Part shown: in pieces, positions 1,564 through 32,024 of the stretch
How positions within the stretch are numbered: position 1 is the stretch's first letter
Layout of the letters: the number at the start of each line of letters is the position of its first letter
Source: Salpingoeca rosetta
Lineage: Eukaryota; Protista; Choanoflagellata
Reading direction: 5' to 3'
NCBI GenBank assembly: GCA_033442325.1
Contig: JAWQFM010000003.1
Span: 705,825 to 769,824 of the forward strand
DNA length: 64,000 nucleotides
Position numbers and translations under genes: made by a program
Notes under the pieces: model-generated
The model's input: only the letters and a program-made list of their open reading frames with translations
What the model was told of the DNA's origin: nothing
The model's database searches: none

Positions 1564-4500
1564 TCAAATGTTGTCAGCGATGGAGAGCATAAACTTGCGG
1601 TACTTGTTTGGCCCCCATTGCCGCACGCGCTGCCACTTGTCGGGGTGCTGACGGAAGTACACGGCGCAGCCCACAATGACGAGGGCGAGGATGATGCAGG
1701 AGATGGTGACGCTGACAATGAGCGGAAGGTTGCTGCCGCCGCTCACCTGGTAGTAGCCGCCAGCCGGAGCGGCTGCGGACCCACCCACCTGGAACACGGC
1801 CTCCCCGTTGCGGATGCGTGCGTTGGGGATCTTGCGCCGAATCTGATGGCAGCTGGTGCCGTTGTACACACACGCGCGGCCGGCGGGCGTGTCTGGGAAG
1901 TAGTACACGTCACCGTAGGAGATGGCCACTGTCACGGGCATGCGCACGGTGATGGGCTTGCCAGACTCTGGGTCGCGCTCGGGCAGAGCCGTGTACTCCG
2001 TGTTGCCGTCAAACCACAGGCTCACCCACATGTCGCCGGCCTCAATCGCAGAGAGGGACGCGGGCGAGATGCTGCCCCAGATGCCCTCAATCTCAAACTG
2101 GTTGTTGAAGGTGGTGTTGACCACGGCGTGCTGGCGCTGCGCCGTCTTGAACTCCACCTGCACATACGGCAGGTTGCCCGTGTCGCTGTAGTACTGGCGG
2201 GCCCAGGGCTCAAAGGCGTCCGAGGTGAGGCGGTAGTAGAGCTGCGTGGCGTCCAGGATGCGCACGGTGACGCGGATGTCCTCGCGGATCATGACGCCCT
2301 CGCGCCGCGTGTTGGCCAGCTGCAGCGTCGTGTCGAGGAACTGCACAATGGTGGCGAGGTCCAGCGGGGTGACCTGCAGAATGTCGCTGCCAGCGGTGCT
2401 CAGGCCGCGGTTCCGGCCGCCCGTGGCAATCGCAGACAGGCCAATGTGCTGCAGGCTCGGCAGGGACTTTGGCTCGATGTTCACGGAGAAGTCGCTCAGC
2501 TCAATGGCCACCTCGTCCGTGCGCACGCCAGAGAAGGTGTCCTCGGTGCTCATGGTGACAATGCCGCCGCGGCTGCCAATGGGCGCCGTCGTCTGCGGCG
2601 CCTCCGTCACCACAATCTTACCCTTCTGGCTGCGGTTGGAGAAGTTGTTGTTGCGCGTGCACATGTAGTGGTAGGTGCCAACGCCCGTGACGCGGTGCGG
2701 CTTGATGTCAAAGTACGTGCCTGCGTCATCGAGCTCAGACATCTCGCCGCCCAGCTGCACGTTGTTGAGGGTGGACAGGTCCACCAGCTGCTGGTACGTC
2801 ATGCCGAGGAAGCCGTCGCGGGTGACGTTGTCCAGGTGCTCCGGGTGCGACATGCCCCACGCGCCGTGCTTGTACTTGTCCGGCACGCCAATGTCCTCCA
2901 GGCGCACGCGCGCTGGCCGCTGCTCCCAGTTGGTGGGGCGGTCTGCGCGCGGGCACTCGCTCCTGACGCACTTGAGCTCGTTGGCGGGCTCCACCTCGTA
3001 GTCCTGCGGGCAGTCGAGCAGCACGGACGCGTCCTGCCCGTCGCTGCCGCCAGCCTGCGCCGTCTCCGTGGGGCGGTCAATCCACTCGCACTTGCTCGAC
3101 GGCTCGTAGCACAGGCGCCAGTTGTACGGGTGCGGCTCCGTCAGCGTGGGCTGGTCCTCTGGCGGGCAGGGGTAGTCGCCCATGGTCGGGTACATGTTGG
3201 GGCGCCAGCCCTCAAGGCCGGGCTCCTGGTCCTTTGTGGTCCAGAAGGTGCCGTCGGCGCCCTGCCCACCGGCCTTCTCCACGCCGCGCCCAAACTGGCC
3301 GCGCACGTACTCGAGGAGGGCCACGTTGGACCGGTCCGTGCCCTGCTTGCCCTGCCCGTCGTTGTGGTTGGGGTTGGTGTTGGAGCCCGTCCACTGGAAG
3401 TGCACGCAGTCGCCCTCGCGAATGTGCAGGCGGTTTGGCGTGAAGTCGTACTCGGTGCCGGGGAACGTCTGCACAATGTTGCCGCGCTTGCCGCGCACGT
3501 TGAGGGAGAAGATACCGTCGCACTGCTTGCGCAGCTCGTCGTCGCGCAGGGTCGACTTGTAGCGGTGGGAGCGGTCCTGGAACGTGCGCCCGAGCTGGGC
3601 CGTGTTGATGGCCAGCTGCAGGTCAAAGTCCTTGTCCTCGGAGGACCCGGGGAGGAAGCCCGTGCCGTTGAAGCACTTGTACGTCTGGTCTGCGGGGTCG
3701 ACGGCCACCTCGGGGTAGTACACGGGGCAGAAGAACCGCGACGCCGGCTGGCGGCCCGTGTAGTCCACAGAGCCGTTTGCGAGGCGGGTGTAGCAGTACG
3801 TCGGGTCGCCTTCAATCGTGAGCTCCGGGTCTGCGCAGAAGAGCCGCTGCGAGAAAAAGTCGAAAATCTGCACCTGCGGGTTCTGCTCGAAGAGGTACCC
3901 GCGGGCGTTTTCCCAGGGGCGCGCGCTGTCCGAGGTCTGGATGCCGTGTGCGCCGGCCACGTTGATGTGCGCGGGCCCGTTGCCCTGGTCCTTGTTCAGG
4001 CTGCTGTTGACCTGGCCCGCGTTGTGCGGGTCGAGCCCGGCGTAGTCCCAGGTGGTGATGTTGTAGCGGATGCGGGTGGCGCAGCGCTCGTGGGCAAAGC
4101 CCGGGTAGGTGAGGTTCCAGCCGTTGGTCTGGCCGCCGACGCCGTTGCCGAGGTGGTTGACGCGTGACCAGTCCGCCTCCATGCACTGCGGCGGGCGGAC
4201 GTGCGGGTAGACCTCCGAGTGGGACGGGGCACGCGCCCAGCGGGCACGCGGCAGGTTCTGCAGGAAGCACTCGCGCTCGATGACCTCGCGGTGCATGCAG
4301 GAGCTGTCCTGGTCGCTGACGAGGTGCAGGCCCGTGGCGTTGAGGTGCGACGCGCGGCAGCGGTCCGCCTCCTGCTGGAAGGCGAGCGAGTCGTTGTAGG
4401 CGGCCGGGCACCAGCTCTGCACGCAGTAGGACGCGTTGACCGTGTCGTGGACAAAGTTCTCGGGGCAGGTGGCGTTGAGGGTGGCGTTGTACGCGCTGAG

Positions 4501-6126
4501 GACGCGCGTGTTCACGCACTCGCTGGGCACGCAGAGCGGGCAGGTGGACATGGACTCTGGGTGCACGACGTTGCTGCCTGGGCAGTCTGGGCAGAGGGCC
4601 TCGAGCTCTGCGGCGGTGATGGTGCGGTTGACGCGCCAGTCGTCCAGGCAGACCTGGAGGGTGCTGTTGTCCCAGGCGTTGTCGAAGCAGGAGCGGATGT
4701 CGGCGATGCACCTCTGGAACTCGGCTTCGACGGTGGCGAGGAGCTGCTCGTGCGCGGGGGAGCGCTGCTCGCGCAGGAAGGCGACCATCTCGGAGCCCTC
4801 CTCGTTGAGGGCCTCGCACGTTTCCTTTGTGTTTGGGATGAATCCGTTGCGGCCGTTGCCGCCCGTGGCGACCTTGTGGTGGTACCACGTGTCGGGGATG
4901 GCGCAGTAGTTCCTGCCGAGCACGTTCTCGCTCTGGTTGCGGTATGCGTCGCAGCGGGAGGCGTTGTTGGTGAAGATGACCCAGTCGATCCAGGGGGTTG
5001 GGTGCCAGTACGGGTAGTGGTCGCGCTCCTCGGGGCACTCAAAGCCGTGGCGGGCGCCATTGTTGTTCTGGCGGGTGTAGATGGCGGTGTTACCGCGGAG
5101 GTTGCGGTCTGAGGTGAAGAGGCCGCGGTTGCGCATGCGGTACTTGCAGTTGACGTAGTAGTCGTAGTCCTCGTGCATGCCGTAGCGCACGTCTGTGTTG
5201 CAGTCGTTGTTGAGGCAGTTGGAGGGCTGGTCTGGGATGGTTCGCGTGGTGACGCCGTCGCGCAGGTTGTCTGAGCACATGTACTGGATGACAATCTGGC
5301 AGTCGTTGTAGTCGTTGCCGCACGCGTGCTGGTTTGTCCATTCCAAGGGGATGGTTTCGCCCTCGTAGTAGTTGAGCGAGCCCACGTTGTACCCGCCACG
5401 GTTGTTGTTCTGCGAATCAAACAGCCTGGTATATGTGTGTATGTGTGTGTGTGAGAGAGAGTGTGTGTGTGAATGAGTGTGAGTGAGAGAGTGTGTGTGT
5501 GAATGAGTGTGTGAGTGTGTGAGTGTGTGAGTGTGTGTGTGAGTGAGAGTGTGTGAGTGTGTGAGTGAATGATAACGGCTTGCTTGGTAGTGTTGTTAGT
5601 TGTTTGTTGTGGGTTTGCATGCGTGTTGACACAACGCTGCTGCTTTGCGTGCACATGAACTCTCCAGCAGCCAACTGATTCAAGCAAGCGGCAACTGTGT
5701 TCCTGGTGGGTGTCACCACCGAACTTGTACCGCCATGAAGGTCCCACCAACAATGCGTATGCACACGCCCCAACAAACACACACACACACTGAGGAACAC
5801 ACACACACACACACTGAGGAACAAACACACACACACACACTGAGGAACACATACACACACACACTCAGAAACACACACGCACTCACACACACACGCTCAC
5901 ACACACACACACTCTCTCTCTCTCACACACACACACACACATACACCCCAAGCATCAATTTCACACACCTGTTGGCGTTGTTTCTGTCACGACGAGCCTC
6001 ATCAAGACGGTTGTTGGAGCCGCGCATGTTTTGCAAGTACATGTCGGCAGTGGTGCTCGCGACCAGCGCAGCCACCACCACAAGCGCCAGCGCCAATGAA
6101 CCCCTGCTTGTGCTGTTGCTGGCCAT
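1564..6126 (-). CDS. DD3-3-like type I membrane glycoprotein (~1339 aa)
   Basis: Exons 6126-5969 and 5425-1564 (AG|gt...cag|G, total 4020 nt). Signal peptide MASNSTSRGSLALALVVVAALVASTTA, followed by DD3-3-type motifs DMYLQNMRGSNNRL, LFDSQNNNRGGYN, EWTNQHACG, ECPEERDHYPYWHPTPW, LAINTAQLGRTFQDRSH, NVRGKRGNIVQTFP and YMCTRNNNFSNRSQKG. Cys-rich inserts, a C-terminal TM helix (LIVSVTISCIILALVIVGCAVYF) and a short basic cytoplasmic tail. Confidence 0.85.
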
Positions 6127-6804
6127 GATGATGAATTGTGACTGGGGTAGTGTTGTTCTGTTGCTTGTGTTGTGTGTGTGAGTTGTGTGTGAGTTGTGGT
6201 CTTGTTTTGTGTGAAGTGTTGTCTTGTGTTGTCTGGTGATGCGATGTGGTCGTGTGTTGTGTGAGACTGCCTTGGCGCCAGTCTTCAATCTCTTTGCTGC
6301 TACTGCCGCTGCCTCTTGTGTGGGGTGAAACGCGCACACACTCAGGCACGCACGAGCGCTGCAATGCGGCTGAGGTGGATGGATGGATGGATACAGCGGT
6401 GCAGCAAGGACGAAACAAACAACAGGCAGACCAGCAAGGCGTCGTTGTGTTCTTCTTGCGAATGAAGCCCACGATCGCTCGTGCGTAAATCTTTCGAGGA
6501 AACAGCAAAGATTTCTTCCTCCTGCGATTAATTTTTTTTGTTGTTCCCAGCGACAACCCCACATACAACACCGCTGCCTGCTGTTGTTGTTTGGTTCGCT
6601 CCATCCATCCATCCATCCATCCATTCGTCCATATCCACACACGCACATCGCCGCCAGCTGGTGCTGTGTTTTGTTGAGTGCACCTTGCAGTCGCATGTGA
6701 GGTGAAGTGTTGTTGTCCGTCACCACATCCTTCACTACACCACACCACACCACACCACACCACACCACACCACACACGCACACTTTTTCACACACACGCA
6801 CACG

Positions 6805-9075
6805 ATGCGAGTGAGAAGCGCGCTTGCTGCGCTGTTGGTTGTGCTTGGTGTGCTGTGCTGCAGTGCACCCATCGCCCTCGGTGATGTGTACATGCACAAC
6901 CCACGCGGATCCAACAACCGCCTGAACGAGCGGTCCGCCAACCGCAACAACGGCAACCGCATGTTCGACTCGCAGAACAACAACCGCGGCGGCTACAACA
7001 AGGGCGACAACAGCGTCAACGCGTTTCAGACATACTCGGAGCAGCATGACATGACCTTCTTCATGTCGCACCCGGACGCGGAGAAGGGCGGTAAGGGCGA
7101 GTCCGTCCTCACCGTCGAGTGGACCAACCAGCACGGCTGCGGCGGAAACGAGCACAACGACCCGCACAAGCTCAACTGCAACATGGTCCTGCAGTACATG
7201 TGCCTCCCGGAGGAGGTGCGCGAGCAGACGCGCGAGACGTGCGACGAGGAGTGCCGCATCCCGCGCCCTGAGAACCCAACCTGCGACCCGGACAACGCCA
7301 ACCAGTGCGGCCTGTCCCCAATCAAGGACATGTTCCGCTGCCGCGAGCTCGGCATGCTGCCCACGGAGGCGGAGATGTACGACCGCTACAACTGCCCGCA
7401 CAGCTGCGGCAACAACGCCGCCGCCAGCAGCCAGCTCGACTGCGGCTCGTCCTGGCGCGAGTACGCCGGCACCGCGGGCTACCTGCGCATGCGCGACGGC
7501 CTCAACACCAACCGCCAGGACTACACCAAGCCCAACAGCGGCACGCTCACGGAGCAGGCCCGCTACAACCGCAAGGCGGGCAACGTGCGCGAGGACCGCG
7601 GTCTGCACGAGGACTGGGACTTTTACGACGAGTGCTACCGCCGCGAGCGCAACCGCGGCCTCTTCACTGCAGACCAGAACCTGCGCAACAACAACCTCGG
7701 CTACTCCTCGGCCGTGTTCACGCGCCAGAACCCCAACGACAACCGCCGCGGGTACGAGTGCCCGGAGGAGCGCGACTACTGGCCCTACTGGCACCCGAGC
7801 CCCTGGGTCGACATTGCCGTGCTCACGGACCGCTCGGACCTGTGCCCCTTTTACCAGGCCGAGTCGCAGAACGTCAAGGGCAAGCACTTTTGCCGCAACA
7901 CGCGCCGCTGCACCAACTGCATCCGCTTCAACAACGAGGCGCAGTGCAAGGCCAACGGCGGCAAGTGGGTGCTGCACCCGCCGCACCACCGCCCGGCGCC
8001 AGAGTGCCTGCAGGCCGCGTGGACCCGCGTGAACCACCTGGGCAACGGCCGCCACGGCCAGCCGGTCACCTACAACTGGACCCTGCCCTACCTGGAGGTG
8101 GGCGCCGACCGCTTTGCCGAGGCCGTGCCCCACCGCTGCGTCCTGCGCCTGCGCTACAACATCTCCACGGACGACTACGACGCCTGGCGCGTCAACGCCT
8201 CGTTCAACAACAACGAGGGCGCCGGTGTCGTGTCCCCCGTGCGGCAGAACCCGAACGTGGACATTGGCGCGCGCAACACGGCCCTGCGCCTGGCCATCAA
8301 CACGGCCCAGTTTGGCCGCACCTTCCAGGACCGCTCGCACGTGTTCCGCCTCGTCCCGCGCACAGACGGGCGCTTCACAGGCAGCCGCCCGCGCGCCAAT
8401 GCCAACGTCAACAACGCAGAGTTCTTTGGCAAGCGCCGCCTGTACAACCTCAACGTGCGCGGCAAGCGCGGCAACATTGTGCAGACGTTCCCCGCGGTGG
8501 AGTACGACTTTGTGCCGAACCACCTGCACATCTCCGAGGGCGACCTGGTGCACATCCAGTGGGCGGGCTCCAACACGCACAACAACGGCAACCCGGCTGG
8601 CGACGGGCAGGCGGGCGATGCGGGGGAGGGCCGCGGCGGGACAGACCGCCACAACTTTGTTGAGCTGCGCCGCCGCCAGTTTGGGGAGAGCTTCCCTGCC
8701 ACCTGGGAGGAGAACACCATCTTCAAGAACATGGTGGATGCCCTGGACGCGCATGCCGAGTTTGAGGAGGAGCCGCACACCATCTCCACCACGCTGGACC
8801 GCGGGCGCGACTGGGAGGAGGTGAAGCAGAGCTGGGCGCTTCGCATGGCCAGCGCAGGGTACTACCGCTCGTTCAACTACAAGGACAACGACGGGAGACC
8901 AGACCCCAACTCCGTGGAGGGCAGGCCCACGCAGCTCAACACCCTGCTGGACAACGCCCCCGCCTCGTATGTGGGCGGCATCTTCCGGTTTGCGCGCGGC
9001 ACGTACAACTACATGTGCACCCGCAACCACAACTTCTCCAACCGCGACCAAAAGGGCCACCTTGTCGTCGAATGA
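6805..9075 (+). CDS. DD3-3-like secreted protein (756 aa, intronless)
   Basis: Single ORF with signal peptide MRVRSALAALLVVLGVLCCSAPIALG and the same motif series as its neighbour (DVYMHNPRGSNNRL, MFDSQNNNRGGYN, ECPEERDYWPYWHPSPW, LAINTAQFGRTFQDRSH, NVRGKRGNIVQTFP, YMCTRNHNFSNRDQKG). It stops right after the last motif and has no TM helix. Confidence 0.88.
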   Translation: MRVRSALAALLVVLGVLCCSAPIALGDVYMHNPRGSNNRLNERSANRNNGNRMFDSQNNNRGGYNKGDNSVNAFQTYSEQHDMTFFMSHPDAEKGGKGESVLTVEWTNQHGCGGNEHNDPHKLNCNMVLQYMCLPEEVREQTRETCDEECRIPRPENPTCDPDNANQCGLSPIKDMFRCRELGMLPTEAEMYDRYNCPHSCGNNAAASSQLDCGSSWREYAGTAGYLRMRDGLNTNRQDYTKPNSGTLTEQARYNRKAGNVREDRGLHEDWDFYDECYRRERNRGLFTADQNLRNNNLGYSSAVFTRQNPNDNRRGYECPEERDYWPYWHPSPWVDIAVLTDRSDLCPFYQAESQNVKGKHFCRNTRRCTNCIRFNNEAQCKANGGKWVLHPPHHRPAPECLQAAWTRVNHLGNGRHGQPVTYNWTLPYLEVGADRFAEAVPHRCVLRLRYNISTDDYDAWRVNASFNNNEGAGVVSPVRQNPNVDIGARNTALRLAINTAQFGRTFQDRSHVFRLVPRTDGRFTGSRPRANANVNNAEFFGKRRLYNLNVRGKRGNIVQTFPAVEYDFVPNHLHISEGDLVHIQWAGSNTHNNGNPAGDGQAGDAGEGRGGTDRHNFVELRRRQFGESFPATWEENTIFKNMVDALDAHAEFEEEPHTISTTLDRGRDWEEVKQSWALRMASAGYYRSFNYKDNDGRPDPNSVEGRPTQLNTLLDNAPASYVGGIFRFARGTYNYMCTRNHNFSNRDQKGHLVVE

Positions 9076-10596: not shown

Positions 10597-11945
10597 GTGT
10601 GTGTGTGTCTGTCTCTGTGCTTCCTGTCTCCCCATACTCTATCCATCTCTTCATGCTTCTCTCCATCTCTTCATGCCTCTCTCCATCCCTACCTGTCCCC
10701 CCCCCCCTTATCTTTCTCTCTGTTCTGTTCTTCTTCGACCTTCTCATTCAACCCCACCTCCGTTTGTTTGTCGATGAGTAGGTCCGCGCGTTTGCCAACC
10801 TCCCTGAAGAGGAGCGCAAGCAGTTTGAGGTACCACCATTCTATCAGCGTGGCTGGGACCACGGTCACGAGCTCATGAAGGTACGTGCATGTGTGTATGC
10901 ATGTGCGCGTGTATGCATGTGTGCGTGTCTGTGTGTGTGTGTGTGTGTGTTGCATGCATATGTGTGTATGTTTGTCTGCCTGTCTGCCTGTCTGTCTGTG
11001 TGTATGCATGTGTGTATAACCTATTGCTGTTGACAGACTTTCGCAGCAAGTGTGACATGCGTGTCTTGTTTTGCCAACCTCATGTGCTCCACCACCACCA
11101 CCCCCCACTTACACACGCGCACACATAACTTGTAGGACGGCCACCCTGATCTGTCGAAAGGCTCGTTCTACTTCAACCCGGGCCAGGATGCGTTTGAGGA
11201 TGTCGATGCGGAGACGGCCAAGAAGTACCCCACCTTCTTCGGCAAGAACGTCTTCCCCAAAACGCAGGTACCCGAGTTTGAGCCCGCAGTCAAGCGCTGC
11301 AGCAAGTTCATGCAAGAGGTGGGCGTCATGCTCGCCAGCCAGTGCGACAAGCTCTTCACACAGCCCAAGACCATCTCAGAGGGCGAGCCAGGCCTGTGCG
11401 AGAGCATTGCCAAGCAGCTCAACCGCCACGCCTGCCGCGGCCTCTACTACTTCCCCACCGCCGAGGGCGACAAGGTGAAGGACGGCTGGTGCGGCTGGCA
11501 CAACGACCACTGCCTGCTCACGGGCCTCATCCCAGGACAGTTTTTCGAGGAGCCTGCAGGCAACGCGTGCGAGAGCCCGGACCCGGACGCCGGCCTGTAC
11601 ATCTGCACGCGCTCTGGCCAGGTGGTCAAGCCCCGCCCGCCCAAGAACGCCATGCTGTTTCAGATTGGCGAGACGGCACAAATCCTCAGCGGCGGTGCGC
11701 TGCGTGCCACCCCACATATGGTGCGTCCCCCGCGCGCCAATGGCGTTGCCCGCACCACCATGCCCATCTTCATGCAGCCCGGCCACGAGCTCGTCCTCGA
11801 CATGCCCGCAAACGCCGACGACGACGCGCTGCTGTGCCCGCACCTGCCAGAGGGTGTGCCCACGCTCGCCAGCCGCTACACCCCAGGCGTCTCCTTTGGT
11901 GACTTCAGCAACACCACCTTTGCCGCGTACTACAACCAAAAGTAA
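10065..11945 (+). CDS. 2-oxoglutarate/Fe(II)-dependent oxygenase (IPNS/DIOX-like), ~363 aa
   Basis: Exons 10065-10152, 10424-10518, 10782-10880 and 11136-11945, all GT-AG and in frame. Iron-binding triad GWHNDH...ATPHMV, with the downstream Arg in ARTTMPIF; N-terminal [17 protein letters not shown] and [12 protein letters not shown] segments. Confidence 0.85.
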
Positions 11946-16057: not shown

Positions 16058-19000
16058 ACATCACGCAGCGAACGGAGAAACACACACACACACACACACA
16101 CAAACACGGACATACAAACACGCACACACACGCACACGCACATACAAACACACACACACTCACGCACACGCACACGCACACGCACACGCACACACACACA
16201 CAGGCAACGAGTACGCGCGCGCACATGGGTTACGCACCATCCATAAAAATGCCGTGAACAAGCACGCCGTCGTCAAAATGGGGCAGCTCTGGCGTGTGGT
16301 CCTTGGCTCCTTCCTCAATGTACACGTGAGGTAATACCTCAAACTGGAAACTCAACGTGTCAATCGGCAAGTTGTACTTGCGCGCGTGCGTCTGCAACGT
16401 GCCGGTCAGGAAACCCTGCAATACGACCACAACACGAGAGCACGAATCAATATGTATTGGGGAGTCGTGTGAGTTGCTGTACATTCTGCGCATCGAGGTC
16501 ACACGGCAGGTCCATGCGAGAACAAACCCCACAACAATGCCACGAAACACACCAGCACATCCAAACTGTACACATACAAACACACACAAACACAAGCTCG
16601 CGCGCACACATACAACACAAACACACACGCATACACGCATACAACACAAACACACACACATACACACATACAACACAAACACAAATACACACACATACAA
16701 CACAAACACAAACACATACACACAAACACAAACACAAACACAAGCTCGCACGCACACACACACACGCATACAAACACACCTGTGGAAAGAAGAAGCCGGA
16801 GAGCCAGAAGGACTTGGGCTTGCCGTGCTTGAGCCAGTGCTCAACAAACTCCAGGCGCAGCACCAAATCCTTCACCCAAGACGCGAGCGGCTTCAAGGAT
16901 GGATATGCCGCCGTCGCCCACATCTCGGGCACCTGGTTGTTGAGGAAGCTCGTGTACACGCGCTCCAGCTCCGCGCTCATCACCACCAGACCCTTGATCG
17001 CCTTCTTGATGTTGCTGAGCGAGTCCCACAGCACCACAAGCAGCTTGTTGAACCGGTCCACCTCCTGCCGCAGCACCGTGCTCAGCGACTGCACGCGCCC
17101 TTGCTCGTCAAGGTCAAACGTGCCCGGCTTCGCCTCGTCAATGTCCAGCAGCGCCTTGGGCAGCTTCTCCTCAATCGAGCCCGCCAGCTCAAACACAATC
17201 TCATCGGGCGTCTTGCCGCTCGCCCCTCCGCTCATGCGCGGCTGCACATCGAGGATCGTGCGCACAAGCATGTTCGTTTCCTCCAGCTGGAACGCAATGT
17301 TTGCGTTGTCGTGCATGCCAAACACCTCCGGGTCGTCCGAGAAGGGAAGGCTGTCCACGTACTCCTGCATCTGCTCAATCGTCTCCACCGCAGGCGCGTA
17401 GTACGTGCCAGAGGGCGAGTACTTGTAGTCCGCGTCCAGGGCCTCCTTCACCAGGTACCTGCGGAGAATCGTCGACAGGCACCGCTCGTCCCACCGGTCC
17501 GTCACGCGCCCACCGTACGTGATCTCGCTCGTGATGAAGAACAGCGCGCTCCACGGCACGTGCCCGTCCTCCAGGAAGATGCGCAGGTTCTCCAGCGCGC
17601 ACTCGCGGTCCGACGAGCTAAACTCGTAGGGGATGTTCCATCCGAGCGCACGGAACTTCTTGCGCTCCTGGATCACGGCGTGGAAGAAGCACAGCCCGAA
17701 GATGAGCTTGCGCCACGTCGTGCCCAGCTTGTGCTTCTCGAAGAAGCTGGGCTCGATGGACGCAAACGCGCCCCGCAGGTTGGCCTTGAGGCCCTTGGGC
17801 GGCTCGTTGGTCACCTTCACGCTGTTCTGCAGCACGCTCACGGGGAAGAACGAGCACGGCGCGGAGCTGAGGAACAGGCGGAAATCGTCGTGCACCGCAG
17901 CCTTGGGGTCCGCCAGCCCCTTGATCACCTGCTCCATCCGCGTCATCCACGACTTGGCCAAGTGGCAGTTCTGCAGGAACACCCAGTCGCCGTTGCGCGT
18001 CGCCTTCTCAATCAGCTTCTCCGCCACGGGGCCCTGGCCCTGCCCGAGAGAGATGGAGTGCACGCGATCGCTGTACGACTTCTCCTGCGCAAAGCGGAGG
18101 AACCCGGACATGGGATCCGAGCCCACCGACAGCACGAAAATGAGCGGCACCGTGGACAGCATGTCGTTGTACAGCGCCTGCATGCTCACGGGCGGCGACT
18201 CCACAAACCGCCGCCCAAGCGACAGGCTCACAAACGCCGCCACGCCCTCCACGGCGCGGTGCGGCACCAGCGCGCGAATCACCATGAGCTTCTGGAACGG
18301 CGTCAGCGCCTCCGCCCACGCCTTGGACGGCTCCCCGCCCTGCTTCAACGTGTCCCCGGCGTGCAGATTGAGCGTCACGGTGACGCTGCCCAGCTCAATC
18401 GGCATGGGGACCGTGACCAGGTCCTGGCCCAGGCCCGCAAACACGTCCGGGAACGCCGTTTCGAGGTCGCAGCACTCGTGCCACACGTGCTCCTGCAGCC
18501 ACGCCGCCGCGTGCTCGGGAATCGGCGGGTACTCCCGCTCCGCAGCGCCAGACCCGCGCAGGAAGTGGTTCCACTCGGGCGTGGTCACGGTGCCGTCCAC
18601 GCGCAGAATCTCAATGCACATCATGAAGCTGAACATAAGCTTGTGGCGCTCAAACAGGCCGCGCGACACGTTGGCAAACACGTTCTCCGTCGAGTAGGAG
18701 ATGATGTTCCGCAGGCGCGTGTCCAGGTCCGATGCCTTCTCGCTCGCCTCAATGCACTGCACGAACAGCTGCTTGAAGTACTCCAGCGAGTACTGGTACA
18801 TGGGGTCGATGTTGCTCATGTCCGCAATGACAAAGAACAGGACGGAGCCGCGCACGGCCGCCGGGCGGTACTTGTCGCGCGCCTCCGTGATGGACGCCTC
18901 CGTGGTCTCTGCGCGCTTCAGGCGCTCGCCAATGGCCGTGGACGTCGTCTTGGAGTCGTTGAGCGTGTTGATGAGCCGCTCGTCATCAAGGATGTTGCCC

Positions 19001-22000
19001 TCCGAGTTGAACAACAGCTTCAGGATCTCGTCCTCGATGCTCTTCAGCTGTGCGCGGTCCTCGTTGATCTGCAGAATCAGCTTTGTCCGCTCCTCCTCCA
19101 GGTCGGGTCGCTCGAGGCGCACCACGTCCGCAAGCAGCTGGTCCTCCAAGCCCGTCTTGGTCACCGTGAAGTTGATGATGGTCACCTTGATGCAAATCTC
19201 GGGCAGGTAGTGCGGGTTGGCCATCTTCGTCGTCATGTAGAAGCGGAAGTTCTTGTCGTAGTCAATGTCGCTGTCACCGAGGCGGATCAGCGTGCGCCCG
19301 CCCTGCTTGAACGTCTGCTTCAGCAGGATGGGCTCCAGCGAGGGGTCCAGCGTCTCCTCAACCTCCTCCAGCAGCACGGGCTGCCCAATGCGGATGGCGT
19401 TCTCCAGCGTGCGCAGGAAGTTGGGGTCTGTCAGCTTGATCACGTGCAGGCCGTTTCGCGCCTCCATCTGCCGAATCCACTTGTTCGCCTGGTCCTGCGG
19501 GTCGATCATCAGCGGCCAGCGCCGCCCACACGTCACCAGCACCGCGTTCTCCGTGGACAGCTGGTCGCGCGGCAGGCCGCTGGCGTTCCACTGCCGAATC
19601 TGGAACGGGCTCGACAGCACGTCCGCCACGCCCATGCCCTCCGTCACGGGGATCTCCAGCTCCTTGCACTTGGCCACCCAGCCCGAGACCAGGTCGGCGC
19701 GGTAGGAGCTGGTGAAGGCGCCAAAGTACGCCACGCACGCGGCCGCCAGGAACACGTTGCCCACGACGTCGTGCACTTGCTGGTCATACTCCTTGACCGT
19801 TTCCGCCCAGCGCACCTGCTCGTCTGCCAGCGCCGTCTGCAGCTTTCCTGCACGCGACAAACGCGCCGCCGTCCTCTCCATGTTGCGCTCCAGCTCCTCC
19901 TTGGCCGCAACGCTCTGCTTGTACTGCTTCTGCAGCGCCTTGATCTTGCCCTCAACCTCCGCCAGCCGGTCCTGCTTGGTCTTCAGCTCGGCCATGGTCT
20001 TGTTCAGCGCCGCTTGCGCCGCCTTGAGCTTCTCGCGCTTGGGCTCCACCGTGCGGAACACGTGCGCGTACTTGTCCATGGCCCGCACCCACATGCAGAT
20101 GGACCGGCATGCCTTGGACACCTTCTCCACCTTCTCCGGCACAAAGTCTGGGTTGTCGATGTAGGGCTTGATCTTCTTCAGCGTGCGGTCAGGGATGTTG
20201 TCCTTGTCGTACTGCATCATCTGCTTCAGAAAGTCCGCCTCGCCCAGCAGCGACTTGGCCGTCTTCCAGTCCGTCTTGCGCCCAAACAGCAGGCACACGG
20301 CCTCCATCACCGTCTGCACCAGCGCTGGCGGCGACGCAAAGGCCTTGAGCTCCTGCACGTCCTCCTTTCGCAGCGACTTGAGCGCGTCCGTGGCCGCCTG
20401 CAGCGCCGGCAGGGCCTCGTCCAGATCGCGCTGCGCGTCCATCTTGATGGCCTCCGTCTCGTTGGCCTCCTTCTGCGCCACAGCCTCCTCGGCCTTGACC
20501 ACCTTGCGCACCTCGTCGGCCTTGGCCTTGTCCACCTTGATGCGCTCCATGAGCTGCATCGTGTCCTCGCTCTGCTGCTTCAGCACTGGCTCCAGTGCCG
20601 TGAGCTCCTCCTCCATGGTGGCCACCAGGTCGTTTGTCTCCTCGAGCTTGTTCAAACCCGTCTGGAAGCGGTCCCGCTGCAGCATGATGTCACGCTTCTT
20701 CTCGTCAAGCATGCCCGTGTACAGGTTGATGAGCTCCAGGTAGCTCGTCGGCGTCGTGTAGTACTTGCGCCGCAGCTCCTCGTAGAAGCGGTCGGCCGTC
20801 TCGCTGACGCTCGTGTGGATCTCCACGCACATCTGCGCAATCTTGCCCTTGAGGCTCTCGTCGCCCAGGTCCACAAACTCGAAGAAGCGCTGCGCAACGC
20901 CGAGCAGGGCCTCGCGCGGCCACTCTGTGAACCAGTCGATGGTGCAGCAGTTGACAATCGAGGGGAACATGCGGCAGCGGGAGCGGAATGCGTCGCCCAC
21001 GGGGCTCATGCACAGCACAATGTGCAGGTTGTCGCGCACGCGGTTGATGAAGTACTGAAACACGGCGTCACGCGACTCGGAGATGCCGGCCTGTCGCGCA
21101 AGCGGGCGCACGGGCTGCAGGAACTGCTCAATCTCGTCGTTCTCAATTAAATTGGGCACCTCGCCCGAGTTGAGCATGTTGTTGATGTCCTCGAGAAACT
21201 CCTCAACCACAATCTGCGTGTCTGTGAAGAGGAAGACGGTCTGCTCGCCCTTGGAGCCGGCGAGTTCGTACAGCTTCTTCAGGTCCTCGCGGAACTCTGA
21301 GTAACCGTAGCCGCGCGTGATCTCAATTTGGAAGCACTTGAAGCCCGCCATGTGGCACGCCATGCGGGTGAGCGACTGCTTGCCGGTGCCGCCAACGCCA
21401 ACAAGCAGGGCGTTGCCGCGTGGCTGGCGAATCATGCGCGCAATGCGAGCAACGTGCGCAATGGCGTCCTGGAAGAACACCAGCTTCATCTCCTTCTGCG
21501 AGCTCAGGTTGTAGTCGTCCAAGTAATCCTCCAACACCTTGGGGAGCTGTCAACAAGGATTCAACATGTGTTTTGTGTGTGCGTGTGTGCGTGTGTGTTT
21601 GTGTTTGTGTGTTTGTGTGTTTGTGTGTTTGTGTGTGTGCGCGTTGTGGCGTGTGTGTGTGTGTGTGTGTGCGCGCGCGCGCGTTGTGGCGTGTATGAGA
21701 ACATGACACATGAACAAACGGTGAAGCGAAGCCGCATCTGAGAACATGCCGTGTTGTGTTGTGCACGCAGACACTGGGGGGAATAAAACAAGGCTGCGAG
21801 CAAATGCGCACCTTTGCTTGGTCGAGCGGTTCGTAAAGACGATCCTCGGCCGGCGCACCCATCTTCATAAAGTCTCCAAAGAGAACAGGCTTGGTGGCAA
21901 GCTGCTCCGCCTCCACATTCTGCATGCGTGGGCACAATTGGGTTGTACGAGTGGGTCAGTGCGTGAGGTTGACAACGGCAGGGGGAGCGGGGGTTGAGCA

Positions 22001-25000
22001 TGCAAGCGTGACAAAGATCCGGGGCACAAGCCTGCACAGTAGGGTCTACGCGTGAGTGCACATTGATTCACCTTGTTGAAGTGCTTGTACGCCATCTCGG
22101 CCAGGATTTCGTTGAAAAAGCCCTTGTCCTCGGCGTTGATGAGACGGTCGTGGAACACGCGCGAGCACTCGTGGCAGAAGAGATCAAACACGTGGTCTGG
22201 CGTGCGAACCACCGAGGAATCCACCTAGAAGATAAAAAAACATCATGAAATGCAATTGCGATGGGATGGAACAACAATCCATGAGCAACTGTTAGCCGCC
22301 GTCTCACCAGACACACAACATGATATCGACACAAACACGGTATCAACTACCAACACATCCTATTCAACTACCAACACCCATGCAGTCACAAGTGAGCTCC
22401 CGCCCCGCCCCCAACACACACACACACACACGCACGCACACACGCACGCACACACGCACACACGCACGCACGCACACACGCACGCACACACGCACGCACA
22501 CACGCACACGCACACACACACACCTGAAGGATGCCCTGGATGCACTTGGAGAGATCACGAAGGTTGAAGACGTAATGCGACTTGGCTGGTGTGGGCAACA
22601 AATCCGTACTCATGCGCTCGTAGATGCCGACAGCGGCGTTGACCACAGCCGACGCGGTGCCAATCACTTCCTTCTGGAAGTCGCACACGGTGAAGAACCC
22701 GCGCGTGATCTGCTCGAAGATGCCCTTGAGCGTGTCCTCGTCTGGGGAGGGCAAGCACATCATGGCAAAGTGGCGCAGCAGGCGCGGCGTGGTCGGGTTG
22801 CGGCCACCACCGGGCGGTGCGCACGCGGCAATCAGCGTCAGGTCCACAATGCCGGTCCACGTGAGCTTGGCGCGGTCGTAGAAGCCGTCGTAGTCCTGCA
22901 GCTGTCGCAGCAGCTCGATTGGCGGCTGCGCACCGTACGTCTCCAGCTTGGGCATGTTCAAGTCGTCCACAAACAGCAGCATGTGCTTGCCCATGGGCGG
23001 CCCAAGCCTGTTCTTGGGCTTCTTCTCCAGCTTGCTCTCGATAATCTCCTGCGTGCGCTGCGAGCTGGTCTGCGCAGAGAAGTTCATGGTCAGCGGCAGC
23101 ACGGAGCCTGCAGCCTCGGCCGTGTCCAGGTACTCCTTCGCAATCACGCTCTTGCCAACGCCAGTGGTGCCCGTGAAGAGCACAGAGTGGCGCATGCGTG
23201 AGAAGCGCTCCAGCAGGTGCTTGAACTTGACTGTGGACGACGTGGGCACGAGCATGTCGAAGAACGGCACGCCCTCCTTGTAGGCGAATTTGGGCACAAT
23301 GTCCGCCCAGCGCAGCAGCGCGGGGGTGTTGGCCTCCAAGGCAACGTAGTAGTCGAAGACGGTGCCCTGGCCCGGGATGCGGATGTCGTGGCGGTCGCTA
23401 AACGAGTCGCGAACAAGCGCGTCAAAGCCCAGGTGGTCCTGGTCAACCAGGTTCCCGCCGACGGACCAGATGAAGGCAAACAGAAAGTAGTTGGAGAGGA
23501 TGGCGTTGAGGTGCTCGTCTTGCTCCTGGGCAGACCAGTCGACGCGTGGGGCGCCTTGGGCGTCCTTCTCGCGCAGCAGATCCTCCAGCAGCACACACAG
23601 CGCGCTTGCCTTGGCCATGTCCACCTGGGCAATGCCCTCGCGCAAGGTCTTGTGGACCTGGTGCAAGACAGAGTCCACGTGCTCGGCAAAGAGGTCGTTC
23701 AGGTGCTCCTTCTGCGGCTCCTGCAGGATGTCGAGGTTGTGCATCCAGCGGTTGACGTAGGGCCGCCAGCCAAGCTCCTGCGGGTCAACGTACACCATGC
23801 CGCAGCGGGACACGGTGGCTGGGGAGGCCACGGCAAGGTCCGCAACCTCAAACAGCATGTGCATGCTGGACGAGAGCTTGATGCGCTCCGAGTTTGCCAA
23901 GCACAGCATCTTGTTGTCGTCGAGCACGGTGTTCATGTTCTCGATCCACAGCGCATCGACGGGGCCGTCGCAGACGATCCATTTGTGGTCGTCGTTGGTC
24001 TGCGCCACGCACTGGCGCACGAGGGTGGCCATGAGGCCATCGCGCCACTCGCCGGTGGTGCCGTCAACCTGGCCGTACAGCTCGCCCATGCTCACCGCCT
24101 TTGGGTTGAGGATGTACTGGTGCACGGGTCGGTACTCAAAGTGCTCCACCCCCTTGTCGTGCAGGCGCGTGAGCGTGTCTGCCAAGACGGCAAGGACGGT
24201 GGACTTGCCGCCGCCGGTTGGGCCAACAAGCATGACGCCGTGGCGCACCACCATCGTCTCGTACAGCTGAATCACCTTGGTCACCTGCGGGTTCTCCACC
24301 TCCAGCTCGCGCTCCTCAATGCACTCCACAATTGTCTCGCGCAGGGAGCCGTAGTCGTGCTCGGGCAGCTCCACCCCGGGGAAGAGGTCTGACAGGATGG
24401 CCGTGAACAGCGCAACGTCCTCCGCAAGGAACTTGGGCAGGTTGCTGTCGCGCAGGGCGGTGAGCAGCACGGTGGCCTCGCTCTGGCCAACACGCGAGCG
24501 CTTGAGCGAGCCCGCCATTACCAGCACAGACTTGACGGCACGCATGCCGAAATCATAGTGGTCCTGCTGAGAAAGCTGCTCGCTGCACAGCTTGTACATC
24601 TGCGTCATCTTGCGAGCCAGGTTGCGCGGGCTCTCAAAGCCCTCGGAGAAGAGAATCACCTCCGCAATCAGCGCGTAGTCTGGCACCATCATGGCAAAGG
24701 GGCGGAAGAGCGCTTTGAGGTTGTCTGGCAGCTCCGTGCGGCCGGCATAGCCGGGGTTCATGGTGATGAAGGCGGCGCACTTGGGGATGAGGCGAATCTC
24801 GCGGCCCTCAAACATGAAACGCTTGGCGCCGCGCGTCTTGGCGTTCTTGATGGTGAGAATCTGCTGCGCAATCACAGAGAGCACCTCAATGTCGATGCGG
24901 TTGAACTCGTCAAAGCAGCACCACGCGCCGCTCTGCGCCAGACCCGAGAAGAACTTGCCCATCATGCGGTAGTCCAGGCCTTCGCTGCAATTGAACACAA

Positions 25001-31000: not shown

Positions 31001-31356
31001 GGTGTTGGTGGCGGCAGTGGTGCGTGGTGGGAGAAGGCCACATCCATGGGCTCTGGGGCAGACGGCACTGGGGGAAGCTTGAGGCTCCGCCCAAGGCCGC
31101 GGGACGAGGTTGACTTGAGGGATGGTGGCTTGCGTGCCTTGAATGTGCCTGTGCGCTGTGTGCCGGCTGATGCCTGGTGCAATCGGGACGCAAGCTGCTT
31201 CCCAGACTCCAGGCGCTCATCCCTGCTGCCACCGCTGCATGGCCGGGCACGGCCACCAGGCAAAGACCCACTCCTGCCCTGTCGCAAGGCATCCTTTGAC
31301 ATGGGAAGCTGTGGCGCTTCCCTCTGCTGCTTGGACGGGTTGATGGCGTGCGACAT
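15501..31356 (-). CDS. DNAH6: Axonemal inner-arm dynein heavy chain, DNAH6-like (~4163 aa, 12 exons)
   Basis: Exons 31356-30183, 29996-29521, 29043-27820, 27476-27165, 26885-25809, 25523-25275, 25019-22524, 22224-22072, 21919-21812, 21546-16780, 16415-16238 and 15778-15501 (12492 nt, in frame). P-loops [24 protein letters not shown] and GVGGTGKQ; CFDEFNRI; stalk and MTBD. The C-terminus [16 protein letters not shown] matches the DNAH6 ending as I recall it. Confidence 0.93.
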
Positions 31357-31364
31357 CTTCGGGC

Positions 31365-31395
<31 letters not shown>

Positions 31396-31605
31396 GTGTG
31401 TCTGAGTGTCCGAAAACAAAGGGGGGCAAAGAGGCCCAAGGGTGTGGCAGGTGCTTCCCTTCTTGCTTCGCTCTCGCCGGGTTGAACGGCGGCGGAAGCC
31501 TCGCTCACAAAGAAGGCAGGTGTCTGATGCTGGTGTTGGTGACCGTGTGCTGTGTGCTGTGTTGGGGGTTTGGTGTGTTGGTGAGTTTGCCTTCGTTGCC
31601 TGTCT

Positions 31606-31622
31606 GTTGGCAAGCTGGCAAC
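31606..31622 (-). promoter_or_regulatory. Candidate RFX (X-box-like) site in the DNAH6/EMC4 divergent promoter
   Basis: GTTGGCAAGCTGGCAAC contains GTTGCCA on the dynein sense strand (31622-31616), about 260 bp upstream of the dynein ATG. A further GTTGCC lies at 31595-31600. The motif is short and could be chance. Confidence 0.4.
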
Positions 31623-31743
31623 CAGTGTAGAAAATACTTTGAAGATGTGGACAATCGGCGTCAATACTGGGTTTGCCATTTGCATCCTCACCTGCAATTG
31701 GCAAAACAGGCACAGCCAACACACACGACCACACATCACAACC

Positions 31744-32024
31744 ATGGACTGGAACCTGCCATCAGAGAAGAAGAGCGGCATCGAGGTGCCAAAGCAGGCG
31801 CGGCCCTTTGGCATGCCGTCTGGTCCCATCGAGAAGACCTCTGAACGTGGCCCAAACAAGCAAAATGTCAAGGAGCTCAAAGCAAAGGTGGGATGTGCCG
31901 TGCTTTTTGTGCACGTGCTTTTGTGTGTGTGTGTGTGTGTGTGTCTGCTTTTTGTGTGTGCGTGCTTTTGGGTGTGTGTGCGTGTCTGCGTGTGTGTGTG
32001 TGCGCGCGTGTGTGTGTGTGTGTC

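What the first reader, a model, noticed from the sequence alone, without database searches (positions are those of the whole stretch)
1564..9075. Head-to-head pair of DD3-3-like paralogues: one membrane-anchored, one secreted
Seen: two diverged paralogues share the same ordered motif series and start 678 bp apart on opposite strands (ATGs at 6126 and 6805). The minus copy adds long Cys-rich inserts, a ~290-aa juxtamembrane region, a TM helix and a short basic tail. The plus copy ends immediately after the last conserved motif and has no anchor. Knowledge: DD3-3-type proteins (first described in Dictyostelium) have no established biochemical function that I know of. Inference: a shared bidirectional promoter co-expresses a surface-bound and a soluble form, possibly a receptor/ligand, heteromeric adhesion or matrix module, or a receptor/decoy pair. 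This is a candidate undescribed extracellular system.
Basis: partly seen in the sequence, partly recalled or inferred. Interest (0 to 1): 0.75.

Follow-up and report, generated by a model that had tools for sequence, protein, structure and literature searches.

The report
Ancient divergent DD3-3 gene pair
Two back-to-back genes of the choanoflagellate Salpingoeca rosetta encode a secreted and a membrane-anchored form of the poorly understood DD3-3 surface glycoprotein, and the same pairing survives in other choanoflagellates, a sponge, a placozoan, a mollusc and amphioxus, which suggests an old, co-regulated two-part cell-surface module.

Summary
The window is Salpingoeca rosetta. The plus gene is PTSG_02296 (756 aa, intronless). 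Their ATGs lie 678 bp apart. They are the only two DD3-3 genes in the genome.

New here:
- The pair represents two ancient classes. A tree separates a secreted class from a TM-anchored class (100/100), with choanoflagellates and animals on both sides. Each class has its own conserved intron position.
- The head-to-head arrangement is kept in Monosiga, three environmental choanoflagellate contigs, Oscarella, Trichoplax, Elysia and Branchiostoma. It is broken in Nematostella.
- Models show a compact ectodomain: a large beta-sandwich plus a cupredoxin-fold domain lacking conserved copper ligands.
- The S. rosetta anchored copy adds Cys-rich inserts and a ZU5-like/FnIII-like stalk. TM-class tails are short and basic, and almost always end in Val, Ile or Leu.

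Best reading: an ancient pair co-regulated from a shared divergent promoter, with products acting together at the cell surface. Co-expression and physical interaction are untested. The genes are annotated as hypothetical and the family is named, but I found no description of the conserved pairing in the searched literature.

The parts
6805..9075 (+). PTSG_02296: secreted (short-class) DD3-3 paralogue, 756 aa, single exon, including the stop codon
   Evidence: ORF. A CDS length of 2271 nt is listed for PTSG_02296 in Fairclough 2013 Additional file 6. Orthologues: M. brevicollis 63% identical, animal 'DD3-3-like' proteins 43-50%.
6805..6882 (+). Signal peptide (residues 1-26). The mature protein starts at a conserved Asp (D-V-Y-M-H-N-P-R-G...).
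   Evidence: Hydropathy. The N-terminal alignment shows conservation beginning exactly at this Asp in 60 sequences. The Edman N-terminus of ascidian HrSMLP1 starts at the same Asp (PMC6916515).
6883..8433 (+). Large N-terminal beta-sandwich domain (residues 27-543), with a choanoflagellate-specific Cys-rich insert at 7219-7464
   Evidence: AF2 model m14221edb1573, pTM 0.84. Only weak LPMO-like structural hits, Z 4.2-4.6. Insert mapped.
8434..9072 (+). Cupredoxin-fold C-terminal domain (residues 544-756) with a long internal insert and a near-invariant R-G-K-R loop at 8458-8469
   Evidence: VIA-align Z 7.2 (5fc9), 6.7 (plastocyanin), 92-94 residues aligned. Foldseek plastocyanin probability 0.96. 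Motif counts.
6127..6804 (.). 678-bp divergent intergenic region (candidate bidirectional promoter plus both 5' UTRs). It contains an inverted (GGAT)n/(ATCC)n repeat, arms 6376-6398 and 6597-6619.
   Evidence: The stretch is unique in the genome. The nearest relative has a 677-bp spacer but little sequence conservation.
5969..6126 (-). PTSG_02295 exon 1: signal peptide (6046-6126) and the start of the conserved N-terminus
   Evidence: Hydropathy.
5426..5968 (-). GT-AG intron, phase 2, 543 nt, rich in CA/GT repeats, at a position conserved across the TM class in choanoflagellates and animals
   Evidence: The same position and phase occur in L008, M. brevicollis, Elysia, Nematostella, Branchiostoma, Trichoplax and Sycon.
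1564..5425 (-). PTSG_02295 exon 2 (1286 codons plus stop): the rest of the membrane-anchored (TM-class) DD3-3 paralogue
   Evidence: 100% identical to P0121, 'hypothetical protein PTSG_02295 [Salpingoeca rosetta]', 1339 aa.
4261..4746 (-). Cys-rich insert 1 (residues 280-441, 14 Cys, 7 N-x-S/T), absent from animal, Pigoraptor and Syssomonas TM forms. Further inserts lie at 3652-3861 and 2866-3285.
   Evidence: MAFFT comparison with five shorter TM-class proteins.
2605..3516 (-). Cupredoxin-like domain of the minus copy (residues about 690-993), with a Cys-containing insert
   Evidence: Homology to plus-copy residues 544-756. Model m5bffb4707f75.
1732..2613 (-). Juxtamembrane stalk (residues about 991-1284): ZU5-like beta-sandwich with an FnIII-like sandwich inserted at 1975-2346
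   Evidence: VIA-align Z 13.6, 12.4 and 11.7 to ankyrin ZU5, 9.1 to UNC5b, 7.5-9.4 to GAIN subdomain B, about 7 to FnIII. Foldseek ZU5A-ZU5B E 1.3e-4. pLDDT is mostly 85-95 here.
1672..1728 (-). Transmembrane helix (residues 1286-1304)
   Evidence: Kyte-Doolittle 19-mer mean of 2.89. Modelled as one long helix.
1567..1671 (-). 35-aa basic cytoplasmic tail. It starts with a conserved Y-F-R-x-H-P-D-K-W motif and ends in ...A-D-N-I.
   Evidence: Of 110 TM-class proteins, 107 end in V, I or L. Median tail length is about 31 aa and median net charge +6.

Best explanation
The locus holds the two members of an ancient DD3-3 paralogue pair that predates the choanoflagellate-animal split. PTSG_02296 is the secreted class and PTSG_02295 the type-I membrane-anchored class.

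Shown: the paralogy, the orthology of each copy to a separate class, class-specific intron positions, retention of the head-to-head arrangement in choanoflagellates and four animal phyla, the domain folds, and the presence or absence of an anchor.

Inferred mechanism: the 678-bp spacer acts as a shared divergent promoter that keeps the two genes co-expressed. Both products enter the secretory pathway and lose their signal peptides, exposing a conserved N-terminal Asp. The anchored form is displayed on a ZU5/FnIII-like stalk. Its short basic tail ends in a hydrophobic residue, suited to a PDZ scaffold or to ER export. The soluble form works with it at the cell surface, most likely held there as a heteromeric partner. 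The ectodomain is more likely a binding module for a glycan or surface ligand than a copper redox enzyme.
For: Paralogy. Identity of the genes. Only two family members in the genome.

Two classes:
- An IQ-TREE tree of 52 proteins separates short from TM at 100/100, with choanoflagellates and animals on both sides. Pigoraptor and Syssomonas fall on the TM side.
- None of the 120 best hits of the plus copy has a C-terminal TM, against 110 of the 120 best hits of the minus copy.
- The TM class has a phase-2 intron just before L/M-F-D-S-Q. The short class has a phase-0 intron just after F-D-S-Q. Each position is shared by choanoflagellates and animals.

Conserved head-to-head pairs, verified by tblastn: M. 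brevicollis, environmental contigs L008, L009 and L010, Oscarella, Trichoplax, Elysia and Branchiostoma.

Cross-lineage microsynteny in Holozoa is otherwise rare. The published exception, head-to-head integrin alpha/beta genes, encodes a co-expressed heterodimer (PMC5560861).

HrSMLP1 was purified from the insoluble membrane fraction of haemocytes. No TM is reported for it, and its size (73.8 kDa) fits the short class.
Against: - I obtained no expression, TSS or interaction data for either gene. The stored copy of the S. rosetta FPKM table is cut.
- Nematostella keeps both classes but has separated them, so linkage is not obligatory.
- The Sycon locus shows two TM copies in tandem, with no short copy in the part of the locus fetched.
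[quoted passage not shown] Conservation within choanoflagellates could therefore be plain synteny.
- The spacer sequence is barely conserved even with an 80%-identical relative.
- HrSMLP1's class could not be fixed from its 17 published N-terminal residues, because the signatures are mixed.
Confidence: 0.55

Rival explanations
1. Same activity in two places. The two classes carry out the same, still unknown, binding or catalytic activity independently, one on the membrane and one in the medium or matrix. The linkage is kept only because regulatory DNA is shared or interleaved. The proteins do not touch.
For: The core motifs are nearly identical in both classes, so both probably bind the same ligand. 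Nematostella tolerates separation. There is no interaction evidence.
Against: It does not explain why a short-class-sized protein without a reported TM is found in an insoluble membrane fraction. Class-specific residue signatures kept for several hundred million years suggest distinct roles.
Confidence: 0.3
2. Neutral relic. An old inverted duplication has simply not yet been broken up, and the arrangement has no functional meaning.
For: The intergenic distance is short in several species, giving few breakpoints. Nematostella broke the pair without losing either gene.
Against: The arrangement is retained in two choanoflagellate lineages and four animal phyla, although holozoan gene order is otherwise scrambled (PMC5560861). 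In Branchiostoma and Elysia the spacers are several kb, yet the pair persists.
Confidence: 0.07
3. Copper or redox enzyme. The ectodomain pairs an LPMO-like sandwich with a cupredoxin domain, and both forms are extracellular copper-dependent oxidoreductases or copper handlers.
For: Cupredoxin fold at Z 7.2. Five LPMO families and X325 align from the mature N-terminus at Z 4.2-4.6. Core polar motifs are extremely conserved.
Against: The mature N-terminus is Asp, not His. The fifth-position His is Gln in the S. rosetta TM copy and in 19 other TM-class proteins. The cupredoxin Cys is replaced in 39 of the 235 proteins in which the motif was found, and there are no downstream His or Met ligands. 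The LPMO Z-scores are at background level for this tool (note).
Confidence: 0.08

Closest known systems
DD3-3 (Dictyostelium discoideum) and animal 'protein DD3-3-like' entries
   Same: Clear sequence homologues. The plus copy is 43-50% identical to named animal DD3-3-like proteins over 65-76% of its length for most of them, and the minus copy hits the roughly 770-aa DD3-3 entries.
   Different: No biochemical function is established for the family, and no Pfam model matched. In the papers that mention DD3-3 (I opened six of the eleven listed), I found no mention of the two-class split, the conserved gene pair or the fold assignment. The choanoflagellate TM form is about 570 aa longer than animal TM forms.
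HrSMLP1 of Halocynthia roretzi (PMC6916515)
   Same: A DD3-3-like glycoprotein on a cell surface. Its Edman N-terminus starts at the same conserved Asp as predicted here.
   Different: It is described as a single gene acting as an allorecognition self-marker. No partner or paralogue pairing was considered. I could not settle its class.
Head-to-head integrin alpha/beta gene pairs of Capsaspora and Corallochytrium (PMC5560861)
   Same: Divergently arranged genes for extracellular or membrane proteins, conserved across holozoan lineages and co-expressed. This is the best analogue for how the locus may work.
   Different: Integrin alpha and beta are unrelated proteins, both membrane-anchored, with a proven heterodimer. 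Here the partners are paralogues, one is soluble, and no complex has been shown.
Collagen IV COL4A1/COL4A2 and histone H2A/H2B pairs (from my own knowledge, not tested here)
   Same: Paralogues sharing a bidirectional promoter, whose products assemble in fixed stoichiometry.
   Different: Unrelated protein families. Stoichiometric assembly is unproven for DD3-3.
Cupredoxins and ephrins
   Same: The C-terminal domain has the cupredoxin Greek-key fold. Ephrins, which are copper-free cupredoxin-fold surface ligands, also appear among the hits (Z 4.4-4.6).
   Different: The copper ligands are not conserved. There is no sequence similarity to ephrins. A roughly 100-aa insert interrupts the domain.
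ZU5 domains (ankyrin, UNC5) and GAIN subdomain B
   Same: The juxtamembrane module of the minus copy matches ZU5 at Z 11.7-13.6 and GAIN-B at Z 7.5-9.4.
   Different: To my knowledge ZU5 domains are cytoplasmic, whereas this module is extracellular. It carries an inserted FnIII-like sandwich. No conserved H-[LF]-[ST] self-cleavage motif appears in the consensus of 38 long forms.

Membership tests
DD3-3 family | Significant full-length sequence similarity to proteins named DD3-3 or DD3-3-like | tested here: met
   the plus copy scores E about 1e-196 to 1e-171 against named animal DD3-3-like proteins; the minus copy scores E about 1e-183 and weaker against named DD3-3 entries.
DD3-3 family | Ordered series of conserved motifs, from the N-terminal D-x-Y...R-G-S-N-N-R to the C-terminal N-F-S-N-R-x-Q-K | tested here: met
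   Invariant columns in the 61-sequence alignment A1. Both window proteins carry the motifs in order.
DD3-3 family | Curated family model (Pfam or NCBIfam) | tested here: inconclusive
   The Pfam scan returned no family for either protein. I do not know whether a DD3-3 model exists in the library. NCBIfam was not scanned.
DD3-3 short (secreted) class | No C-terminal TM, protein ending within a few residues of the last motif, phase-0 intron after F-D-S-Q, R-L-N-E signature | tested here: met
   The plus copy has no TM and the R-L-N-E signature, and groups with the short class at 100/100. The class intron has been lost in S. rosetta (single ORF).
DD3-3 TM class | C-terminal TM, short basic tail ending in a hydrophobic residue, phase-2 intron before L/M-F-D-S-Q, R-L-D-E signature | tested here: met
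   The minus copy meets all four.
Blue copper proteins (type 1 cupredoxins) | Cupredoxin Greek-key fold | tested here: met
   Z 7.2 at 2.3 A over 92 residues (5fc9). Z 6.7 to plastocyanin. Foldseek probability 0.96.
Blue copper proteins (type 1 cupredoxins) | His, Cys, His, Met copper ligand set | tested here: not met
   The only candidate Cys is replaced by S, N, G or D in 39 of 235 proteins. The following loop has no conserved His or Met.
Lytic polysaccharide monooxygenases and X325 | N-terminal His of the mature protein forming the histidine brace | tested here: not met
   The mature N-terminus is Asp. The nearby His (fifth residue) is Gln in the minus copy.
Lytic polysaccharide monooxygenases and X325 | LPMO beta-sandwich fold | tested here: inconclusive
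   Z is only 4.2-4.6 with rmsd 3.5-5.0 A, which is at the tool's background level.
ZU5 domain | ZU5 beta-sandwich fold | tested here: met
   Z 13.6, 12.4 and 11.7 with 120-128 residues aligned at 2.7 A. Foldseek E 1.3e-4.
GAIN/GPS or ZU5-type autoproteolytic modules | Conserved H-[LF]-[ST] cleavage motif in the last strands | tested here: not met
   No such conserved motif appears in the consensus or the invariant list of alignment A3.
Class I PDZ-binding C-terminus | [ST]-x-hydrophobic residue at the C-terminal end | tested here: not met
   The S. rosetta tail ends D-N-I, which is class-III-like. Of 110 TM-class tails, 51 fit class I and 107 end in V, I or L. Binding to PDZ domains was not tested.

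The most novel reading that the evidence does not exclude
The secreted and anchored DD3-3 forms are obligate partners of one pre-metazoan cell-surface recognition or adhesion complex. Their bidirectional gene pair would then be one of the very few microsyntenies kept from the choanoflagellate-animal ancestor, and the ascidian allorecognition marker HrSMLP1 would be a late use of this module.
Probability: 0.25. Interest if true: 0.8.

Novelty: new variant of a known kind. Interest (0 to 1): 0.62.

Why it matters
DD3-3 proteins are among the most strongly conserved extracellular proteins shared by choanoflagellates and invertebrate animals (45-50% identity). They are reported absent from vertebrates (PMC6916515, PMC6208332) and have no known biochemistry.

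This analysis shows that the family consists of two ancient classes, one soluble and one anchored. Their genes have stayed head-to-head since before animals arose, in lineages where almost no other gene order survives. That turns an anonymous family into a concrete, testable two-component surface module.

S. rosetta is a good organism for the test. It has exactly one copy of each class and only 678 bp between them. To my knowledge it is also genetically tractable. The result bears on the origin of animal cell-surface recognition and on why some gene pairs resist rearrangement.

Tried and rejected
- Pfam gave no family for either protein or for exon 1.
- A PDB sequence search gave nothing at E up to 1.
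- The ESM Atlas returned only the DD3-3 family itself and chance-level structural rows.
- The default mixture-model tree did not finish in two runs, so I used LG+G4 with a careful search instead.
- The metagenome scan returned 80 loci, nearly all 2-3 kb mRNA-length contigs. They were useless for gene order.
- Aligning the spacer with the closest relative showed only scattered short blocks. The inverted GGAT/ATCC repeat is unique in the genome and absent from that relative, so it is neither a transposon nor a conserved element.
- A literature search for PTSG_02295/02296 found no main-text mention. The stored supplementary table held only the antisense rows, so I have no sense-strand expression values.
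- Furin cleavage at the near-invariant R-G-K-R loop was considered. HrSMLP1 runs as an intact 100-kDa band, so cleavage is unlikely, at least in ascidian haemocytes.
- GPS/ZU5-type self-cleavage of the stalk was considered and rejected for lack of a conserved motif.
- A downstream anchor exon for the plus copy was rejected.
Exons were searched and translated separately by reference. Where a full-length protein was needed, I used the database protein P0121.

Full report
**Identity of the window.** The window is GC-rich eukaryotic DNA with CA/GT-rich non-coding stretches and GT-AG introns. Exon 2 of the minus gene is 100% identical to 'hypothetical protein PTSG_02295 [Salpingoeca rosetta]', 1339 aa. 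CDS lengths of 4020 and 2271 nt are listed for PTSG_02295 and PTSG_02296 in a supplementary table of Fairclough et al. 2013. They equal the two gene models derived here.

**Checking the observation.**
- The plus gene is one ORF, 6805-9075, 756 aa.
- The minus gene starts at ATG 6126 but is split. Exon 1 ends at 5969. A 543-nt GT-AG intron (5968-5426, phase 2) follows, and exon 2 runs from 5425 to the stop at 1564-1566.
They were translated and searched separately by reference. Where a full-length protein was needed I used the database protein P0121.
- BLASTP between the products gives five collinear matches (E 3e-31, 1e-30, 2e-15, 3e-11, 2e-08).
- Both proteins have N-terminal signal peptides. 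Only the minus product has a C-terminal TM (residues 1286-1304), followed by a 35-aa basic tail.
- Compared with shorter TM-class relatives, the minus product has inserts at 280-441 (14 Cys), 575-644 and 767-906, plus about 292 aa between the last family motif and the TM.
- The plus product stops 7 residues after that motif.
- A six-frame search of the whole genome finds no other family member.

**Family.**
- No Pfam family matched and no PDB sequence relative exists.
- The word-index search shows that the plus copy is a standard DD3-3 protein. It is 63% identical to M. brevicollis MONBRDRAFT_31750 and 43-50% identical to many animal 'protein DD3-3-like' entries of about 650 aa.
- The minus copy has full-length orthologues of 1300-1480 aa in many choanoflagellate transcriptomes and environmental contigs. 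Its best animal hits are a second set of DD3-3 entries of about 770 aa.

**Two ancient classes.**
- None of the 120 best hits of the plus copy has a C-terminal TM. They end a median of 6 residues after the last motif.
- By contrast, 110 of the 120 best hits of the minus copy have a C-terminal TM.
- A maximum-likelihood tree (52 proteins, 528 columns, LG+G4) separates the two classes with 100/100 support. Choanoflagellates and animals are on both sides. Pigoraptor (labelled Opistho-2) and Syssomonas (labelled Colp12) fall on the TM side; the two species names are my reading of those dataset labels.
- Gene structure gives independent support. TM-class genes share a phase-2 intron one codon before L/M-F-D-S-Q. 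This is seen in S. rosetta, L008, M. brevicollis, Elysia, Nematostella, Branchiostoma, Trichoplax and Sycon.
- Short-class genes share a phase-0 intron directly after F-D-S-Q. This is seen in M. brevicollis, L009, L010, Branchiostoma, Trichoplax, Elysia, Oscarella and Nematostella.
- Class signatures also hold: R-L-N-E in 99 of 106 short proteins, against R-L-D-E in 93 of 101 TM proteins.
- The duplication therefore predates the choanoflagellate-animal split. There is no sign of within-species gene conversion.

**Conserved head-to-head arrangement.** I mapped both classes by tblastn on fetched loci.

| Species or contig | Arrangement | Spacing |
|---|---|---|
| M. brevicollis | TM gene (-), short gene (+) | 961 bp between annotated genes |
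| TARA scaffold L008 | Head-to-head | 677 bp between ATGs |
| Environmental contigs L009, L010 | Head-to-head | not measured |
| Oscarella lobularis (sponge) | TM gene (-), with a tail ending ...S-F-Q-S-K-V; short gene (+) | about 465 bp between first coding exons |
| Trichoplax sp. H2 | Head-to-head | about 2.5 kb between annotated genes |
| Elysia chlorotica | Head-to-head; annotated gene ranges overlap | overlapping |
| Branchiostoma | Head-to-head | about 6 kb between annotated genes |

- The pair is broken in Nematostella, where each gene has unrelated neighbours.
- The Sycon locus holds two TM copies in tandem.
Some of these contigs are only 0.17-1.4 Mb. This is suggestive but is not proof of adjacency.
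- Published work reports that cross-lineage microsynteny in Holozoa is rare. It singles out head-to-head integrin alpha/beta genes, a co-expressed heterodimer, as the notable exception (PMC5560861).
- One caveat applies. [quoted passage not shown] The animal comparisons therefore carry the weight of the argument.

**Folds.**
- The plus copy, modelled with 61 aligned sequences, is confident (pLDDT 79.6, pTM 0.84).
- Residues 544-756 adopt a cupredoxin fold: Z 7.2 at 2.3 A over 92 residues to 5fc9, Z 6.7 to plastocyanin, and Foldseek probability 0.96.
- The type 1 copper ligands are not conserved.
- Residues 27-519 give only weak LPMO-like hits (Z 4.2-4.6), all aligned from the mature N-terminus. 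That N-terminus is Asp, not His.
- The ESM Atlas added nothing further.
- Edman sequencing of ascidian HrSMLP1 begins at the same conserved Asp (PMC6916515). This supports the predicted signal-peptide cleavage site.
- The C-terminal 697 residues of the minus copy, modelled with 38 sequences, show a confident juxtamembrane module. It matches ankyrin and UNC5 ZU5 domains (Z 13.6-9.1), more weakly GAIN subdomain B (Z 7.5-9.4), and carries an inserted FnIII-like sandwich (Z about 7).
- No conserved self-cleavage motif is present in the alignment consensus.

**Cytoplasmic tail.** TM-class tails are short (median about 31 aa) and basic (median net charge +6). A juxtamembrane motif of the Y-F-R-K-H-P-D-K-W type is found in 55 of the 110 tails. 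They end in V, I or L in 107 of 110 cases, and 51 fit a class I PDZ ligand. The S. rosetta tail ends D-N-I. This points to a conserved cytoplasmic partner or an ER-export signal. That is inference, not a test.

**Intergenic region.** The 678-bp spacer contains an inverted (GGAT)n/(ATCC)n repeat (6376-6398 and 6597-6619). The repeat is unique in the genome and not conserved in the closest relative, whose spacer is nevertheless 677 bp long. I could obtain no TSS or expression data.

**Interpretation.**
- Shown: the paralogy, the class orthology, the anchored versus secreted dichotomy, the deep conservation of the divergent arrangement, and the domain folds.
- Inferred: shared bidirectional regulation, and joint action at the cell surface, possibly as a heteromer that tethers the soluble form.
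- Literature on function is thin. HrSMLP1 is a surface or membrane-fraction glycoprotein linked to haemocyte allorecognition (PMC6916515). A sponge DD3-3 is induced by microbial patterns, and a Dictyostelium knockout is reported to aggregate faster (PMC6208332). Sea star anterior epidermis expresses dd3-3.
- The main rival is independent action of the same activity in two locations, with the linkage kept only by shared regulatory DNA.

**Verdict.** The genes belong to a named but functionally unknown family. In the searched literature I found no description of the ancient two-class structure, the conserved bidirectional pair or the fold assignments.

Noticed in passing
window 16447-32000 (-) and L001 13761-22818 (-): A dynein heavy chain gene, in several exons, lies downstream of the short DD3-3 gene in both S. 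rosetta and M. brevicollis. Local synteny between the two choanoflagellates therefore extends beyond the pair.
   Followed up: partly
window 11310-11945 (+): An ORF with a 2OG-Fe(II) oxygenase domain (Pfam E 1.6e-05) sits between the DD3-3 pair and the dynein gene.
   Followed up: no
L010 381-2690 (+): In one environmental choanoflagellate contig, a furin/kexin-like proprotein convertase (Peptidase_S8 plus P_proprotein) lies tail-to-tail with the short DD3-3 gene. The family has a near-invariant R-G-K-R loop (plus copy 8458-8469), but ascidian HrSMLP1 runs as an intact 100-kDa protein.
   Followed up: partly
window 6376-6398 and 6597-6619: An inverted (GGAT)n/(ATCC)n repeat (23-nt arms, 91% complementary, 198 nt apart) lies in the middle of the divergent spacer. 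It is unique in the genome and absent from the nearest relative.
   Followed up: yes
L012 30285-30500 (+): In Nematostella, a second copy of the last cupredoxin exon of the TM-class gene lies about 12.5 kb downstream, with tblastn statistics identical to 17784-17999. It is probably a tandem partial or second copy.
   Followed up: no
L012 23347-25645 (+): The gene next to the Nematostella TM-class DD3-3 has a Tae4 hit (PF14113). As far as I know this family comprises bacterial type VI amidase effectors, so its presence in an animal genome is worth a look.
   Followed up: no
P0012 and P0132: In one choanoflagellate transcriptome, the short and long transcripts carry the same Trinity component name (comp16588_c0, seq2 and seq1). 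This could mean overlapping divergent transcripts or shared k-mers.
   Followed up: no
L015 1-17486 (+): Sycon ciliatum has two TM-class DD3-3 genes in tandem (763 and 806 aa), a lineage-specific duplication (sister pair at 100/100).
   Followed up: partly
window 7219-7464 (+): The secreted copy also carries a choanoflagellate-specific Cys-rich insert (82 aa, 8 Cys) relative to animal short forms.
   Followed up: partly
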